Source: Phallusia mammillata (lineage: Eukaryota). Taken from it: a stretch of DNA of 64,000 bases. Numbering within the stretch: position 1 is the first letter of the stretch; each line of letters starts with the position of its first letter. Made by a program: the position numbers and the translations under genes. Below, piece after piece: positions 14,648 to 20,588 of the stretch. The notes beneath the pieces are model-generated. The model ran no database searches and was not told the origin of the DNA. It worked only from the letters and a program-made list of their open reading frames with translations. The stretch covers positions 16,802,001 through 16,866,000 of the forward strand of contig OZ281500.1 in the NCBI GenBank assembly GCA_965637545.1, in the 5' to 3' direction.

Positions 14648-17600
14648 TTACGAAGCAGGAGCTCTTTCACAGAGGGTGTGGTAGCGGTTTGAGACGCAAG
14701 GGACGTCATTCCAATCGTCATCCCAAACTGTCACACAATCCTCTCTTCCACCATAGTTGTTGGGCTCGTACCAACCCCAATAGGTAAATCCTCGACTCGC
14801 TGGAACCCCGTTTTCCCACACGAACGTACCTTCGCGGTTCAGATCTGTCAATCCAATATATACCTCCACATCGTAAAAGTCTGTCATTACGCTCCTATAA
14901 AATGAAAAAATAAAAATAAAGACGAGTTTTTTTCGTTGAATGTGTATTAGGAAAGTTCGAAAAACGACGACTACACCAAAATGCCTTTATAAAATTAGTG
15001 AGAACCCTTCTAGGGTTTGTTGGCGAAATAAGCACCGCCCAAACACTTTTTTCCTAGGGCTGTCGCAGTAATTCTGTAATATTATCAATTCACGAGTTCA
15101 GCTGTTTTTTATTTTTTTGTGTTGATGGCAATCAAACTTAACATTACAGTAAAACGAAGGTATTTGAAGAATACAATCATAACATTTGATTGTTTAAGTT
15201 TACAAAACCAACCAGTAAGTAGATTTGTCTGCAAATCCAGTATGAGCAATTTGGCCTCCAATTGCAGCGCAAGCCCTTTTCCCGTTGTAATAGCCACCTG
15301 AATGGCGTACCACCTTGTAACTATATCCATTTTTTCCAGTACGGACTCTTCCACTCAGCCATTGTGCTTCTGCAGCACACACAGCAGTAATTTTAATTAT
15401 TCCAATTCGACGTGGGATACACTTAAAATTCTGAAAAATTGAGAGGTATTTAATCTGTGGCTGTACTGACATGTTATAAAGCAATATTTGTCTGAAACGA
15501 TTAGGAGGCTGTCATTCGTAAAACAATGTGGTCTTGTCTTTACAAATTTACTCGCTAAATAGCACACAAGGCGTTACATAACTGTTTTATAGTTTAAACT
15601 AGTGATGTGCCGAATCGGCTAAATTTCGGCTCGGCCAAAACCGAACACGCAAAGTCGTACGCTACGCGTTTGACATGAAAAAATGTTACCAGACAAATTG
15701 TGCAGAATACTACCTTGGGGAAAAAAAGGTAATGTGTCAAAAATATAGAAATTGATTTTCCTTATGATGCAGCTTAAAAAGATTACTTGATATCTTACTT
15801 GGCATAAAATGCACGTTTAACGGTTTAATTTTGTGTTCGTAAAATATTCGGTTTCAGCGGAATCACAACAATTTATTCGGCCGAAACCAAATCTTTGCAA
15901 AAATGGCCGATTCAGCCGAATAAACTCGGCAAACCGAATATTCGGTACATCGCTCGTTTCACCTACCTTTCCAAAGCTCATTAGTACGTTCTTCCAGGCG
16001 GCGAAATCGATCTGAAAGTACGGCAATCAATGAGATAATATGACACTGTTTATTTCATATCACTTCGAAATTTTTAAAAAAATGTGTCAAACTGAAATGA
16101 CCTTTCCTCAAAATCAAATGTCGGCTTTTTGTTTGCTCAGAACGTCAAATAAGTTTTTCAACTTAACTAAATTAATAAACTGAGACAAATTACGACAAGG
16201 GACATATGCTATAAGCATTAAGATATCGTTATACACGTTGTCCCGCACACCGGGGAAATAAAAATAAGTGTGCATGTGAAACGTCACATTAGTTGACAAT
16301 TAAAGAGACAACTCACTTTCATTATTGTTGGCCGCTCTTCCAGGTTCTCCTTTAGCACCTTTTGCACCACTTCGTCCAGTGTATCCAGTTGGCCCAGGAG
16401 GTCCAGTTGGTCCAGGAGATCCAGTGGGTCCAGTAGATCCACGTGGCCCAGTAGATCCACGTGGCCCAATAAGTCCAGTTGGCCCAGTAAGTCCAGTTGG
16501 CCCAGTAAGTCCAGTCGGCCCAGTAAGTCCAGTCGGCCCAGTAGGTCCACTTGACCCAGTAAGTCCAGTTGGCCCAGTAAGTCCAATTGTTCCCTTGTAC
16601 AAACAACACTATTTTGAAACATATACACAGTTTAAACAACTTTAGCTGGCACAATACTTAAAACAAGTAATTTGCGGATAGATTTGTACTTGGGATAACG
16701 TTTTTGGAAGGTGTAATGGCAACACATGCTGCTGCGATTTAGTTTTTTTTCTGTGACATTATTAACATTTTTAGATGCAGCTTGGAATACGTTTCGCCTT
16801 TGTTGGACCTGAAATGCATATCGTGTAACAGGCTTAGTACCGGTTTAATAAAATAGCTTCATCAAAGCTTGCATTGTTTTTGTGAGTAGAATTTGTCATT
16901 GAAATTTCCCCCCAGTAAACGATTCATTTGAAATCAATCACCTGTTTTCCAGGTTCCCCTTTTGCTCCTTTCATACCACTTTGTCCAGGGATTCCAGTTG
17001 GCCCAGTAAGTCCAGTTGGCCCAGTAGATCCAGGTGGCCCAGTAAGTCCAGGTAGCCCAGAAGGTCCAACTGGCCCCTTGTACAAACAACTGTATTTAAA
17101 AAATATACTCACAATTCCCCACAACTTTAGCTGTTTACTTAAACACACAATACTTAAAACAAGTAATGTGTGAATAGATTAGTACTCATGATACCATTTT
17201 TGGAAGGTTTAAATGATAATACTTACTACTGCGTATATATATGTTTTGCAACATTTTTGACATTTTTAAAAGCAGCTTGAAATACATTTTGCCTTCGTTG
17301 AACCCGAAACGTTGGTTGTATAACAGGCTCATTACCGGTTTAATAAAAAAGTTTCATCAAAGCTTGCAATGTTTTTATGGGTAGAATTTTCACCTTGACC
17401 CAGTGGTACCAAAAATTCTTCGTTTGTACAAACGATTATAGTTTGATCACCGTCGGCATATAGAGCTAACCTTAATTATGTTCGTTCAATTAAGAGTTAT
17501 TTATTTTATCTACATTGCGTTTTAGGCTATCAGGAAGTAATCAATAACTTATGTTTAAACTCGTCAATAATGAAATTCGTCGAAAACGTAGCTAATCACT

Positions 17601-20588
17601 AATCAACATAATCATAAATCCACATATACTATTGTAGGCAAGCAAACTCAAAGCGTAATAAAACACAAAAATAAGCCATTTTAAATTCAATCACCCTTTT
17701 TCCAGGAAAACCCGGAGCTCCTTTGGCTCCACTTCGTCCAGTAAGTCCAGTTGGCCCAGTAAGTCCAGTAAGCCCAGCAAGTCCCTTATAAAAACAACAC
17801 TATTTGAAAAATATACACAGTTACACAGTTTTTGTTTTTAAGATAACAATGATATCTTGGCAAAAATAGGACTATAGAATAAAAATACATTTGCCAGAAG
17901 AGCTCTATAAACCTGGTAACCCTAACTTTGGTTGACATTTTGTAACATTTTTAACAATCTTTGAGCCTAATTAAAGCAAAAATGAGTCGTTTTAAAATCA
18001 ATCACCCTTTTTCCAGGTTCCCCTTTCGCTCCTTTCATACCACTTTCTCCAACAAGTCCATTTGACCCAGTAAGTCCAATTAGTCCCCTCTACAAACAAC
18101 ACTTTTTAAAAAATATACACACACTTTTAAACAACTTTTGCTGACACAATACGTAAATTACGTAATGTTGGATAAATTAATACTTGTGGGGAATTTAAAA
18201 CACATAGTTTTGTGACCCGTACAGAGGGACCTGACACCTTGTCGTTGGTGTAGTGGGGGTCTAAGATCGAGTCCAACCCAATAATCCAACGGCAACGCGC
18301 GAAAAAGGTTGGATCGAACGTTTCCCAGAATTGAAACGTTCGCGTTTCTGCTAAAAACAAACAGAGCCCAGCAGCAGTATAAAAATAGGATAGGCTCTGT
18401 TGAACTCTGCACCCAGACTAACATTCTTCACTAAAGAGTGAAGCAGGTTTGTTGCCTAAATGGGAACATCTTTGGAAAATCCTCGAGTAACACAAAGTCG
18501 ATGTCGCTCGACCCAAAGCAACCCACGCAACAGCAACGTCGCTGGAAGCAACAACCGATTACCATAGGGTACTGTTACCGAAATATTTCGGAAGGTCTGA
18601 TAATAATCGGTCTTATATTTCAACCGGTCCGGTCCAGAACCCTGCAATAACGGCTCACCACTAAAGCCAAGTACTCCCGCACTCTGCTATAGCTAATGTG
18701 TGCGGACTTTCATTAAAACAAAGTAAAAAAAATCGTTACACCAAGTACGTGGCCACCCACCACCACCCTTACTACATGGCTTTCGCCCAGAATTGAAATC
18801 CACCCTTATTTCATGGTTACCAAAAATGAGTGCTCGGTGTAGCACCGGACCGACTTCGATCTAAACATGTTCGCACCGCCCACATGCTTTAATGCTGGGG
18901 CGAAAGAAGTAATTTGTAATGCCCACACTGTGGAGCAGATAATTATCTGCGTAAGCAAGATAAGGATCATCTTGTCCTAACATGTCCTTTAACCAATGTA
19001 CAAGGTGGTTATCTGACAGCACATGAATGCGATACAGCATTCAGGGACTTGCTCCAAAAAATATTCGATCATATCTAGTTTTTTAAGACGTGGAAAGCAT
19101 ACGACAATACATGCTGGTGTCCTGGTCGGCATATGTGGTTAACGCCTTAATTATGTTCGTTCTATTGAGAGCTATTCATCTTATCTACATTGTGTTATAG
19201 TAACAAATAAGTCTTATCTGGTAAGTTACCAGTGGTAACAAATACGTTTAAACTCGTCAATAAAGAAATTTGTCAAAAGAGTAACCAATCACTGATCTAT
19301 CATCCATTGTAGCTGGCAACTACGTTAAAGCAGCGGTTCTCAACCTGTGGGGCGATACTCCAACTGGGGTCGCCTCACAATTTGCCTGGGGTCGCCTTAG
19401 ACAGGGGTGTCTAACGCGCGGCCCATGAAGCCCTCCAATGCGGCCCTTAAACACTTAACAACAATTGCAATATTTTGTCAGATTTGTATTTAAATATAAT
19501 AATTTTTTCTCACTTTTCCAATTAAAAGCTGTTATTTAAACAGACATTTACAGAAATTTCATTTATAATAAAAACTGATATGTTCTGGATAGAAACGTTG
19601 AAAATCGTTCCTGTAACTAAAATAAGCGTTAAGTTTCAGTCAGGGGTGCGAAACCTTCGCCCGTACGGCCACATAGACGAGTTTGTGCGGCCATAAACAT
19701 ATTTATGGAAATATATGTACTGGCAGCCGTGATGTAATTAAAAATCCTTTGCCAAATATTTTGATTTTCATACTGCTCTAAACAGATTTTGTGATACTGA
19801 AAAGAGTATTACCAGCCTAGCCCTAGTAGCCATATGCATTAGACTTTTTTATGCAAACAATGCGGATACCATAAGCGTCACAATATAGATTATGACGTCA
19901 TAAACGGTTAAGACTGATCTTCATACTGCGCAGCTCTGTGATTTAAGTTAGAAAATTAATCTGGGCTTTTTGGGCCCTAATAGATGGTATATGCATATGA
20001 TATAAACCAGTTTCTTTACATCGGTAATTTTAAAACAAAATCCAGCAGGCAATTGGCGGCTGTTGGTGAAATAAGGATCTGCAATGCGACCGTTGTAACG
20101 AAAAGGTTGTGCACCCCCGGTTTAAGTGTATAAAACTAGATTATAAATCACATGCGGCCCTTGGCATAATTTCCAAACTGCAATGTGGCCCTCGAACCCC
20201 AACGAGTTTGACACCCCTGGCCTAAGACATGGTTCCCAACTCGTTTTAAGCAATGGATCACTAACCCCAATAAAATCTGACCACTTTATTATTGAGAAAG
20301 AATACAGTGAATGTTAATTTATAGCCTGCTAATTTTATCCTTGTGGTCACCGCAACTTGGCAGATGTTATCAAGGGATCATGGCACAAAAGAGGTTGGGA
20401 ACCGCTGCCTTAAAGCCTAATAAAATGCAAAAATGATTAATTTTGATGTCAATTACCTTTTTTCCGGGCAAATCACGAGCTTCTGCTGAAACACAGCAAG
20501 ATGGCTGTATTTCTTGTCCACGCCCAGGTAAGAGTTGAAAACTTGCCAAGACGAATATTGCAACACAGAAAATGCCGTTACAAAGCAT
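14648..20588 (-). CDS. Collectin copy C (type I), intact, 8 exons, 388 aa: 20588-20457, 18089-18006, 17784-17695, 17076-16942, 16593-16317, 16011-15967, 15369-15213, 14894-14648
   Basis: Exon lengths sum to 1167 nt with an open frame. Signal peptide [25 protein letters not shown]-terminal CC, 63 consecutive Gly-X-Y triplets, neck, and CRD with EPN and WND. Confidence 0.9.
15600..15955. mobile_element. hAT MITE (TAGTGATG family) in the neck-CRD1 intron of C; orthologous copies at 29317-29674 (D) and a truncated copy at about 9250-9440 (B)
   Basis: Same family as 405-913. It occupies the same intron position in B, C and D and is absent from A and G. Confidence 0.8.
19402..20219. mobile_element. 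C-specific hAT MITE with a nested MITE (19641-20119), inserted into older MITEs shared with D
   Basis: TIRs CAGGGGTGTC / GACACCCCTG, TSD GCCTTAGA / GCCTAAGA. Inner element TSD GTTTCAGT / GTTTAAGT. D shows the empty site GCCTTAGG at about 22601. Confidence 0.85.

What the first reader, a model, noticed from the sequence alone, without database searches (positions are those of the whole stretch)
16942..20588. Collagen cassette exons multiply an exon-junction PGKxG motif resembling the MASP-docking site
Seen: each upstream exon ends in PGK(K/R/Q/M/G) in phase 0. In C the junctions give PGKR|GLA, PGKR|GPV and PGKQ|GTI; in D they give PGKR|GFT, PGKM|GPV and PGKQ|GTI. F has one (PGKK|GPT) and G has one. 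The first C/D junction has an extra residue that breaks the Gly-X-Y register. Established: MBL and ficolins bind MASPs through the Lys of Hyp-Gly-Lys-Xaa-Gly-Pro, and MBL has a single kink-forming interruption. Inference: exon duplication gave C several protease-docking sites per chain, and the symmetric phase-0 exons (84, 90, 135 nt) could be skipped to tune stalk length and site number.
Basis: partly seen in the sequence, partly recalled or inferred. Interest (0 to 1): 0.7.

Follow-up and report, generated by a model that had tools for sequence, protein, structure and literature searches.

The report
Collectin gene with repeated PGK junctions
A lectin gene of the collectin type (collagen stalk plus sugar-binding head) lengthened its stalk by copying an exon three times. 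Each copy carries the same Pro-Gly-Lys ending, which resembles the site where complement proteases dock on mannose-binding lectin, but docking is not shown here.

Summary
Gene C (minus strand, 14648-20588) splices into an intact 373-aa secreted protein: signal peptide, two-Cys N-terminus, 63 unbroken Gly-X-Y triplets and an EPN/WND C-type lectin domain.

Exons 2-4 are 84, 90 and 135 nt, all phase 0. Exons 1-4 end in PGKK, PGKR, PGKR and PGKQ. The inverted twin D ends in PGKG, PGKR, PGKM and PGKQ. F and G each have one PGKK|G junction.

The repetition is inherited. Each cassette exon shares its upstream intron flank with the main collagen exon. It shares its last codons, donor and downstream flank with exon 1. 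Unequal crossing-over that reused the exon-1 end explains this.

P-G-K codons are identical in 11 of 11 copies, including a dead relic, while the next codon varies freely (K, R, Q, M, G).

The resemblance to the MBL/ficolin MASP site (Hyp-Gly-Lys-aliphatic-Gly-Pro) is real only for the core. The full form occurs at one junction per gene (PGKRGPV in C, PGKMGPV in D) and in F.

The exon-1 copy in C/D lies before the helix starts, so the "kink" is not MBL-like.

No RNA contig covered any exon, so neither expression nor exon skipping is shown. MASP binding is untested.

This is an ordinary lineage-specific collectin cluster carrying a testable motif.

The parts
20457..20588 (-). Gene C exon 1: ATG, signal peptide, N-terminal segment with two adjacent Cys, ends DLPGKK, donor gtaattga
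18006..18089 (-). Gene C cassette exon 2, 84 nt, phase 0-0. Its acceptor is shifted 3 nt and adds Arg before the first Gly. Ends GEPGKR.
17695..17784 (-). Gene C cassette exon 3, 90 nt, ends GFPGKR. Its last ~35 nt match the exon-1 ends of G and F. With exon 4 it gives PGKRGPV.
16942..17076 (-). Gene C cassette exon 4, 135 nt, begins GPVG, ends GEPGKQ
16317..16593 (-). Gene C main collagen exon 5 (87 Gly-X-Y residues, Thr-rich, plus ANNNE), donor in phase 1
   Evidence: (Pfam Collagen 1.5e-16)
15213..15369 (-). [quoted passage not shown]
14648..14894 (-). [quoted passage not shown]
   Evidence: (Lectin_C 9e-12)
22239..22370 (+). Gene D exon 1 (inverted twin of C), ends DLPGKG
24307..24390 (+). 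Gene D cassette exon 2, 84 nt, begins N-GPIG, ends GEPGKR
24918..25007 (+). Gene D cassette exon 3, 90 nt, ends GFPGKM. With exon 4 it gives PGKMGPV, the best match to the published motif.
25825..25959 (+). Gene D cassette exon 4, 135 nt, ends GDPGKQ (last codon CAA)
26845..26916 (+). Relic of the 3' half of a G/F-type exon 1 inside D intron 4 (..EIKGAQGFPGKK|gtaattga). It has no collagen part upstream.
28448..28724 (+). Gene D main collagen exon 5
38732..39559 (+). Gene D exons 6 (38732-38888) and 7 (39316-39559), behind a 10-kb transposon-filled intron. The lectin domain has lost EPN (now RPI) and WND (now RID), but the reading frame is intact.
44626..44820 (-). Gene F exon 1, ends GLKGDKGFPGKK. 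Exon 2 (from 44310 downward) begins GPTG.
46380..46568 (+). Gene G exon 1, ends LKGDRGFPGKK. Exon 2 (from 48440) begins GSTG.

Best explanation
Gene C encodes a secreted collectin-like lectin. It has a signal peptide, a short N-terminus with two Cys (inferred to make inter-chain disulfides) and a 63-triplet collagen stalk. Its C-type lectin head carries the EPN/WND calcium and sugar ligands, so mannose-type binding is inferred.

Shown: the stalk grew by three phase-0 cassette exons. Each cassette has the upstream intron flank and 5' coding part of the main collagen exon. Each has the last codons, donor site and downstream intron flank of exon 1.

Inferred: unequal crossing-over between the Gly-X-Y coding end of exon 1 and the collagen exon made the first cassette, and later duplications made the others. 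Every cassette therefore inherited exon 1's ending, CCT GGA AAA NNG|GTRATTGA. This is why PGKx|G recurs at each junction.

The single PGKK|G(P/S)T junction of the short-stalk paralogs F and G is the older state.

My reading is that the extra copies in C and D are passengers of exon duplication. They are kept by the collagen need for Gly and Pro and by the purine-rich exon end next to the donor, rather than being an evolved array of protease sites. I put roughly 30% on at least one junction Lys being a real MASP/CUB docking Lys. The best candidates are e3|e4 (PGKRGPV in C, PGKMGPV in D) and PGKKGPT in F.
For: - Intact spliced 373-aa frames for C and D with canonical splice sites.
- Pfam Collagen and Lectin_C hits on the exons.
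- The lectin exon matches EPN-type domains of Mincle, MRC2, DC-SIGN, CL-11 and MBL at E 1e-13 to 1e-9.
- Alignment A1: e2, e3, e4 and e5 share the 60-nt upstream flank.
- Alignments A2 and A3: e1, e2, e3, e4 and the relic share the donor and about 45 nt of downstream flank. The last ~35 nt of e3 match the exon-1 ends of G and F.
- BLAST of C against D shows that the introns around the cassettes are copies of one another.
- P-G-K codons are identical in 11 of 11 ends, including the non-coding relic. The next codon takes five different residues and differs between the twins C and D, K to G and R to M.
- C versus D in the Gly-X-Y part shows 28 nucleotide differences, none at Gly codon positions 1 or 2 (P about 9e-4). 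The cassettes therefore evolve as collagen.
Against: - The Lys codon is conserved more strongly than the donor consensus alone requires, since that consensus covers only the last exon codon.
- GFPGKK is kept between the diverged paralogs F and G despite a synonymous Gly change (GGA/GGT). This fits protein-level constraint on the Lys.
- No K-to-R change is seen in any copy, although it needs only one transition. The main collagen exon consistently ends in PGR instead.
- Ascidians are reported to have MASPs, and Lys in the X position after Pro is the one essential feature of the MASP site.
- A further scan note reports PGKxGP in another collectin cluster of the same genome (unchecked).
- No transcript data support my gene model.
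Confidence: 0.6

Rival explanations
1. One junction Lys per chain is a genuine MASP (CUB-domain) docking site, as in MBL and ficolins. The candidates are the e3|e4 junction in C/D and the single e1|e2 junction in F and G. The other PGK copies in C and D are redundant or weak.
For: [quoted passage not shown]
- Lys is the only essential residue, and Pro is dispensable (PMC2856262).
- Three substitutions were enough to give SP-A near-MBL affinity for MASP-2.
- The Lys is invariant in all copies and in diverged paralogs.
- MASPs and MBL-like collectins are reported in ascidians.
Against: - Xaa is basic (K or R) in C, F and G, which is untested in the papers read. A Lys in the Y position may be hydroxylated and glycosylated next to the docking Lys (mentions this concern).
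- The one perfect copy, in D, sits on a protein whose lectin head has lost all sugar ligands.
- The motif is short, and the ending is also preserved in a dead relic.
- No MASP of this species was examined.
- The role of ascidian collagen-bearing MBL-like proteins in complement activation is called unclear in PMC11312191.
Confidence: 0.22
2. One reading: exon duplication was selected because it gives C several protease-docking sites per chain, and regulated skipping of the symmetric exons tunes stalk length and site number.
For: Three in-helix PGKxG sites lie at residues 69, 99 and 144 of C. All cassettes are phase 0-0, so any combination stays in frame. The Gly periodicity is maintained in both twins.
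Against: - No isoform or expression evidence was found.
- The Xaa residue drifts freely, including to Gly, which the published motif excludes.
- The papers read here place the docking motif on each collagenous stalk, and none of them describes several sites along one stalk.
- The repetition has a simple mechanical origin.
- The exon-1 copy is outside the helix.
Confidence: 0.08
3. The cassette exons, or the whole gene C, are not used. The cluster is in birth-and-death decay and C/D are silent or on the way to becoming pseudogenes, so the motif has no present function.
For: - None of four RNA-labelled runs of the same species has a contig on any C exon. They cover only intronic repeats.
- The cluster holds clear wrecks: B lacks exons 1 and 6, and copies with stop codons lie at 12579-13060 and 40595-40810.
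- D has a 10-kb transposon-filled intron and a lectin head without sugar ligands.
- No close protein relative was found in the public collections.
Against: - C and D both keep intact 373-aa frames, all splice sites and every Gly of 63 triplets despite 28 differences.
- C keeps EPN, WND and four Cys.
- Contigs of four small runs cannot show absence, and immune lectins are often induced or tissue-restricted.
Confidence: 0.1

Closest known systems
Vertebrate mannose-binding lectin (MBL) and other collectins (CL-K1, SP-D)
   Same: The order of parts is the same: signal peptide, Cys-containing N-terminus, collagen stalk, C-terminal C-type lectin domain with EPN and WND. As in human MBL2, exon 1 carries the N-terminus plus the first collagen residues. 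A Pro-Gly-Lys-X-Gly(-Pro) motif lies in the stalk. From my own knowledge, not checked here, the stalk length of 63 triplets is in the range of SP-D.
   Different: - There is no long coiled-coil neck, only about 19 residues between the last triplet and the lectin domain.
- The lectin domain is no closer to collectins than to Mincle, MRC2 or DC-SIGN, so orthology is not shown.
- It has three or four motif copies instead of one.
- The residue after Lys is mostly basic or polar rather than aliphatic.
- The stalk is Thr-rich (Gly-Pro/Leu-Thr).
[quoted passage not shown]
   Same: Lys sits in the X position preceded by Pro in the Y position at every junction. Gly-Pro follows at e3|e4 and in F. D has Met as Xaa.
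   Different: Xaa is K, R, Q or G at most copies. Binding is not tested. The copies sit exactly at exon ends and owe their repetition to exon duplication.
Ascidian MBL-like collectins (Ciona CiMBL/CinMBL, Styela plicata collectin), as listed in PMC5465252 and PMC11312191
   Same: These are collagen plus C-type lectin proteins in a tunicate. The literature treats them as candidate lectin-pathway recognition molecules, and MASPs are reported in the same animals.
   Different: I could not obtain their sequences, so neither homology nor the presence of the motif in them was tested. Their complement role is called unclear.
Halocynthia roretzi glucose-binding lectin (GBL)
   Same: It is an ascidian C-type lectin reported to work with MASP and C3.
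   Different: It is grouped in the literature with recognition lectins that lack a collagen domain (and my own knowledge). Its MASP contact therefore cannot be a collagen Lys motif.
Exon duplication in collagen genes by unequal crossing-over between Gly-X-Y repeats
   Same: The exons are phase-0 and begin with a Gly codon. The copies have homologous intron flanks. Length changes come from repeat slippage.
   Different: Here the recombination joined the main collagen exon to the end of exon 1. Each new exon therefore carries the exon-1 donor and its Pro-Gly-Lys ending.

Membership tests
Collectin (collagen-containing C-type lectin, vertebrate definition) | C-terminal C-type lectin domain with calcium/sugar ligands (EPN or QPD, and WND) | tested here: met
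   Pfam Lectin_C E 9e-12 on exon 7. EPN, WND and four Cys are seen in the spliced C protein. The PDB matches are EPN-type domains.
Collectin (collagen-containing C-type lectin, vertebrate definition) | Collagen-like Gly-X-Y domain N-terminal to the lectin domain, in the same polypeptide | tested here: met
   Pfam Collagen E 1.5e-16. There are 63 unbroken triplets in the spliced model. The splicing is inferred from the sequence and was not seen in RNA.
Collectin (collagen-containing C-type lectin, vertebrate definition) | N-terminal Cys-containing segment for oligomer formation, after a signal peptide | tested here: met
   Exon 1 has a hydrophobic leader followed by ..QPSCCVS... The disulfide role is inferred.
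Collectin (collagen-containing C-type lectin, vertebrate definition) | Alpha-helical coiled-coil neck of about 25-30 residues between collagen and lectin domain | tested here: not met
   Only about 19 residues ([19 protein letters not shown]) separate the last triplet from the start of the lectin domain, and no separate neck exon exists. No coiled-coil predictor was run.
Collectin (collagen-containing C-type lectin, vertebrate definition) | Sequence orthology of the lectin domain to vertebrate collectins | tested here: inconclusive
   CL-11 and MBL score no better than Mincle, MRC2 or DC-SIGN. The best public relatives reach at most 55% identity and are multi-domain lectins.
MASP-binding recognition molecules (MBL/ficolin type) | Lys in the X position of a triplet, preceded by Pro/Hyp in the Y position | tested here: met
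   PGK is found at residues 69-71, 99-101 and 144-146 of C, at the same places in D, and once each in F and G. Hydroxylation of the Pro cannot be tested.
MASP-binding recognition molecules (MBL/ficolin type) | Xaa after Lys aliphatic, not Gly (PMC2592599). Ser is tolerated and Glu is not (PMC2856262). | tested here: not met
   Xaa is R, R, Q at the in-helix junctions of C and K in F and G. In D it is G (exon-1 end), R, M and Q. Only the Met of D fits.
MASP-binding recognition molecules (MBL/ficolin type) | Gly-Pro following (helpful but not essential) | tested here: inconclusive
   Present at e3|e4 in C and D and in F. Absent at the other junctions, which read GLA/GFT, GTI and GST.
MASP-binding recognition molecules (MBL/ficolin type) | Calcium-dependent binding of MASP CUB domains that depends on the Lys | not testable with these tools
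   This needs recombinant proteins. No MASP gene of this genome was available in the window.
MASP-binding recognition molecules (MBL/ficolin type) | Site located inside the triple helix, C-terminal to any interruption | tested here: met
   This holds for the three junctions e2|e3, e3|e4 and e4|e5. It does not hold for the exon-1 copy in C/D, which has only one triplet before it.

The most novel reading that the evidence does not exclude
An ascidian collectin uses the MBL-type Pro-Gly-Lys-X-Gly-Pro site to dock MASP, so the collagen-Lys/CUB contact predates vertebrates. In the long-stalk genes C and D, several such sites per stalk, whose number is set by cassette exon inclusion, recruit more than one protease module per stalk.
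Probability: 0.08. Interest if true: 0.65.

Novelty: new member of a known kind. Interest (0 to 1): 0.3.

Why it matters
A recent survey calls the role of tunicate collagen-bearing MBL-like lectins in complement activation unclear (PMC11312191). This cluster offers concrete constructs for testing that question. There are short-stalk genes with one PGKK|GP site (F, G) and a long-stalk gene with three in-helix sites (C). Lys71, Lys101 and Lys146 are defined positions to mutate. It is also a clean example of how a collagen stalk grows: recombination between exon 1 and the collagen exon makes a new in-frame exon that carries the exon-1 donor. That process alone can multiply a short motif without any selection for the motif.

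Tried and rejected
1. RNA evidence. The look-up of sequencing runs found two DNA-type holders and only 'RNA?' runs with about 1% of the words. Read laying on X3, X4, X8 and X12 put contigs only on intronic repeats (15592-15959, 17866-17912, 18629-18698, 19772-20219) and on no exon. Nothing can therefore be said on expression or exon skipping.

2. Public relatives.
- phmmer of the exon-7 peptide against 1.84 billion representatives gave 4123 hits. The 150 listed are dominated by multi-CTLD proteins, identity is at most 55%, and none of the ten short hits I fetched has a collagen part.
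- The word search with the 112-aa exon-7 reading frame found no candidate. Its length window of 62-196 aa cannot see full-length proteins. A spliced protein has no reference, and I did not type one in.

3. A metagenome scan for the exon-end/donor pattern gave 59 hits, about the number I roughly estimate from chance. None has a Gly-X-Y context.

4. The ESM Atlas look-alike search returned only generic C-type lectin clusters.

5. Paper searches found no text on a MASP motif in ascidian collectins. The Ciona MBL paper (PubMed 19699760) is not held.

6. A tRNA-derived element that I suspected at about 18200-18300 was not found by ARAGORN.

7. I did not verify independently that the genome is a sea squirt. 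That comes only from earlier scan notes.

Full report
**What is in the window.**
The window is animal DNA with about 38% G+C. Earlier notes of this scan call the genome a sea squirt. I did not verify this.

A six-frame scan for Gly-X-Y runs, and tblastn with the exons of one gene, show a cluster of related genes and fragments:
- A (plus strand, 3926-5975). It has no exon 1 in the window.
- B (plus, 8657-9723). It lacks exons 1 and 6.
- A broken F-like copy (minus, 12579-13060).
- C (minus, 14648-20588).
- D (plus, 22239-39559).
- A second broken copy (minus, 40595-40810).
- F (minus, 42511-44820).
- G (plus, 46380-50016).

Pfam finds Collagen on the long collagen exon and Lectin_C on the last exon of each gene.

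**The observation.**

| Gene C exon | Coordinates | Length | Ending or content |
|---|---|---|---|
| e1 | 20457-20588 | 132 nt | ends ..DLPGKK |
| e2 | 18006-18089 | 84 nt | ends GEPGKR |
| e3 | 17695-17784 | 90 nt | ends GFPGKR |
| e4 | 16942-17076 | 135 nt | ends GEPGKQ |
| e5 | 16317-16593 | 277 nt | begins GTIG |

- All these introns are phase 0, and all have AG acceptors and GT donors.
- The junctions read PGKR|GLA, PGKR|GPV and PGKQ|GTI.
- D has the same exon lengths and reads PGKR|GFT, PGKM|GPV and PGKQ|GTI.
- F has PGKK|GPT and G has PGKK|GST.
- The extra residue at the first junction of C and D comes from a shifted acceptor. The family's usual ..tacaag|GG has become ..tag|AGG GGA in C and ..tag|AAT GGG in D.

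**Gene model.**
- After exon 5 the donor is GAA A|gtgagt (phase 1).
- The matching acceptor is ..gctgcag|AA GCA CAA TGG at 15369.
- Exon 6 ends TAC TG|gttggt, and exon 7 starts at 14894.

Spliced, C is an intact 373-aa frame. It consists of:
- a leader;
- a short N-terminus with two adjacent Cys;
- 63 unbroken triplets from Gly46 to Ala234;
- about 19 linker residues;
- a C-type lectin domain with EPN, WND and four Cys.

D splices in the same way to an intact 373-aa frame. Its intron 5 holds a LINE and a Mutator-type element. Its lectin domain has lost EPN and WND.

The lectin exon of C matches EPN-type domains of Mincle, MRC2, DC-SIGN, CL-11 and MBL about equally. The architecture is therefore collectin-like, but orthology to vertebrate collectins is not shown. 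A coiled-coil neck is missing.

**Where the repeated motif comes from.**
Four results bear on the origin:
- Alignment of the cassette exons with 60 nt of flank shows that e2, e3 and e4 of C and D share their upstream intron flank with the main collagen exon e5.
- Alignment of the exon ends shows that e2, e3 and e4 share the donor GTGATTGA and about 45 nt of downstream intron with exon 1 of C and D. The exon-1 end of G shows the same ending.
- The last ~35 nt of e3 match the exon-1 ends of G and F. A relic of the 3' half of a G/F-type exon 1 (..EIKGAQGFPGKK|gtaattga) lies in D intron 4 and ends at 26916.
- BLAST of C against D shows that the introns around the cassettes are copies of each other.

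The simplest history is unequal crossing-over between the Gly-X-Y coding end of exon 1 and the collagen exon. That event makes a new internal exon with the collagen exon's acceptor and exon 1's last codons and donor, flanked on both sides by copies of intron 1. Further duplications followed. Under this history the PGKx|G junction is multiplied automatically.

**Is the motif under constraint?**
- The codons CC[T/C] GG[A/T] AAA are present in 11 of 11 exon ends (C e1-e4, D e1-e4, F e1, G e1 and the relic).
- Mean pairwise identity is 0.94-1.0 for these three codons.
- It is 0.85 for the first 8 intron bases, 0.58 for the codon after Lys, 0.55 for the preceding 12 nt, and 0.60 for intron positions +9 to +33.
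- The residue after Lys is K, R, Q, M or G. It changes even between the young twins C and D. All these codons but one end in G, as the donor consensus prefers.
- F and G keep GFPGKK despite a synonymous change in the Gly codon.
- No copy has Arg for Lys.
- The relic, which has no acceptor or collagen part, keeps the ending too.

I conclude that the Lys is conserved. Protein-level selection cannot be separated from youth of the copies or from splicing signals.

Between C and D, the Gly-X-Y part has 28 nucleotide differences. None falls at positions 1 or 2 of a Gly codon (P about 9e-4). The cassettes therefore evolve as collagen-coding sequence.

**Comparison with the MASP site.**
[quoted passage not shown] It lies beyond the interruption of the MBL stalk (PMC2592599).
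- Lys is the only essential residue. Ser is tolerated at Xaa and Glu is not. The Pro can be Ala.
- Three substitutions gave SP-A near-MBL affinity for MASP-2 (PMC2856262).

Against this standard the core (Pro-Gly-Lys with Lys in the X position) is met at all junctions. The full form is met only at e3|e4 (PGKRGPV in C, PGKMGPV in D) and in F (PGKKGPT). An aliphatic Xaa occurs only in D, whose lectin head looks unable to bind sugar.

The exon-1 copy in C and D has a single triplet before it (..[13 protein letters not shown]..). It is not in a helix, and the register break there marks the start of the stalk rather than an MBL-like kink.

Ascidians are reported to have MBL-like collectins and MASPs (PMC5465252). 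The complement role of their collagen-bearing lectins is called unclear (PMC11312191).

**Expression and isoforms.**
No listed run that holds this stretch is on record as RNA. Contigs of four RNA-labelled runs of the same species lie only on intronic repeats, and none lies on an exon. Skipping of the symmetric exons would keep the frame, but it remains a pure possibility.

**Relatives elsewhere.**
- The exhaustive profile search returned only generic and multi-domain C-type lectins, at most 55% identical.
- The word search found nothing within its length window.
- A metagenome pattern scan gave only chance hits.

Within the window it holds across the F, G and C/D lineages. Another scan note reports PGKxGP in a second collectin cluster of this genome (unchecked).

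**Verdict.**
Exon duplication and the resemblance to the motif core are real. An evolved multi-site docking array with tunable exon skipping has no support.
- The origin by reuse of the exon-1 end explains the repetition.
- I rate the thing as a new member of a known kind, a tunicate collectin-like gene cluster, with a testable candidate MASP site.
- My estimates: about 30% that at least one junction Lys docks a MASP, and about 8% for the full multi-site model.

Noticed in passing
window 20220-21144 and 21683-22609: Genes C and D lie head to head as an inverted duplication. The arms, which include promoter region and exon 1, are 94.7% identical over 927 nt, with about 540 nt between them.
   Followed up: partly
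window 38732-39559: Gene D keeps an intact 373-aa frame and all splice sites, but its lectin domain has replaced EPN by RPI and WND by RID. Canonical calcium/sugar binding should therefore be lost. This is either a decaying copy or a head with a new ligand.
   Followed up: partly
window 26845-26916: A relic of the 3' half of a G/F-type exon 1, with an intact donor, sits inside D intron 4. It is absent from the much shorter corresponding intron of C.
   Followed up: partly
window 15592-15959, 17866-17912, 19772-20219: Intronic repeats of gene C are matched at 90-99% by many contigs of RNA-labelled runs, with loose ends on both sides. They are probably members of transcribed dispersed repeat families, and the 15.6-16.0 kb one also lies next to B at 9175-9385.
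   Followed up: no
window 16317-16593, 28448-28724, 3926-4132, 8657-8863: The main collagen exon is built from 9-nt units coding Gly-Pro/Leu-Thr. Its unit pattern differs between paralogs (69 to 87 residues). Thr fills most Y positions and Pro is scarce.
   Followed up: no
window 8400-9726 versus 14651-16844: B is an inverted partial copy of the 3' part of C, with collagen exon, flanks and last lectin exon about 94% identical at the protein level. It lacks exon 6 and any exon 1, so it is a gene fragment.
   Followed up: partly
window 53600-58700 and 58750-63850: A tandem duplication of about 5.15 kb carries a gene with a von Willebrand A-like reading frame. The reading frames of the two copies are nearly identical.
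   Followed up: no
window 5733-5975, 42511-42720, 49771-50016: Paralogs A, F and G have [11 protein letters not shown], with two extra adjacent Cys in the sugar-binding loop, where C and B have [11 protein letters not shown].
   Followed up: no
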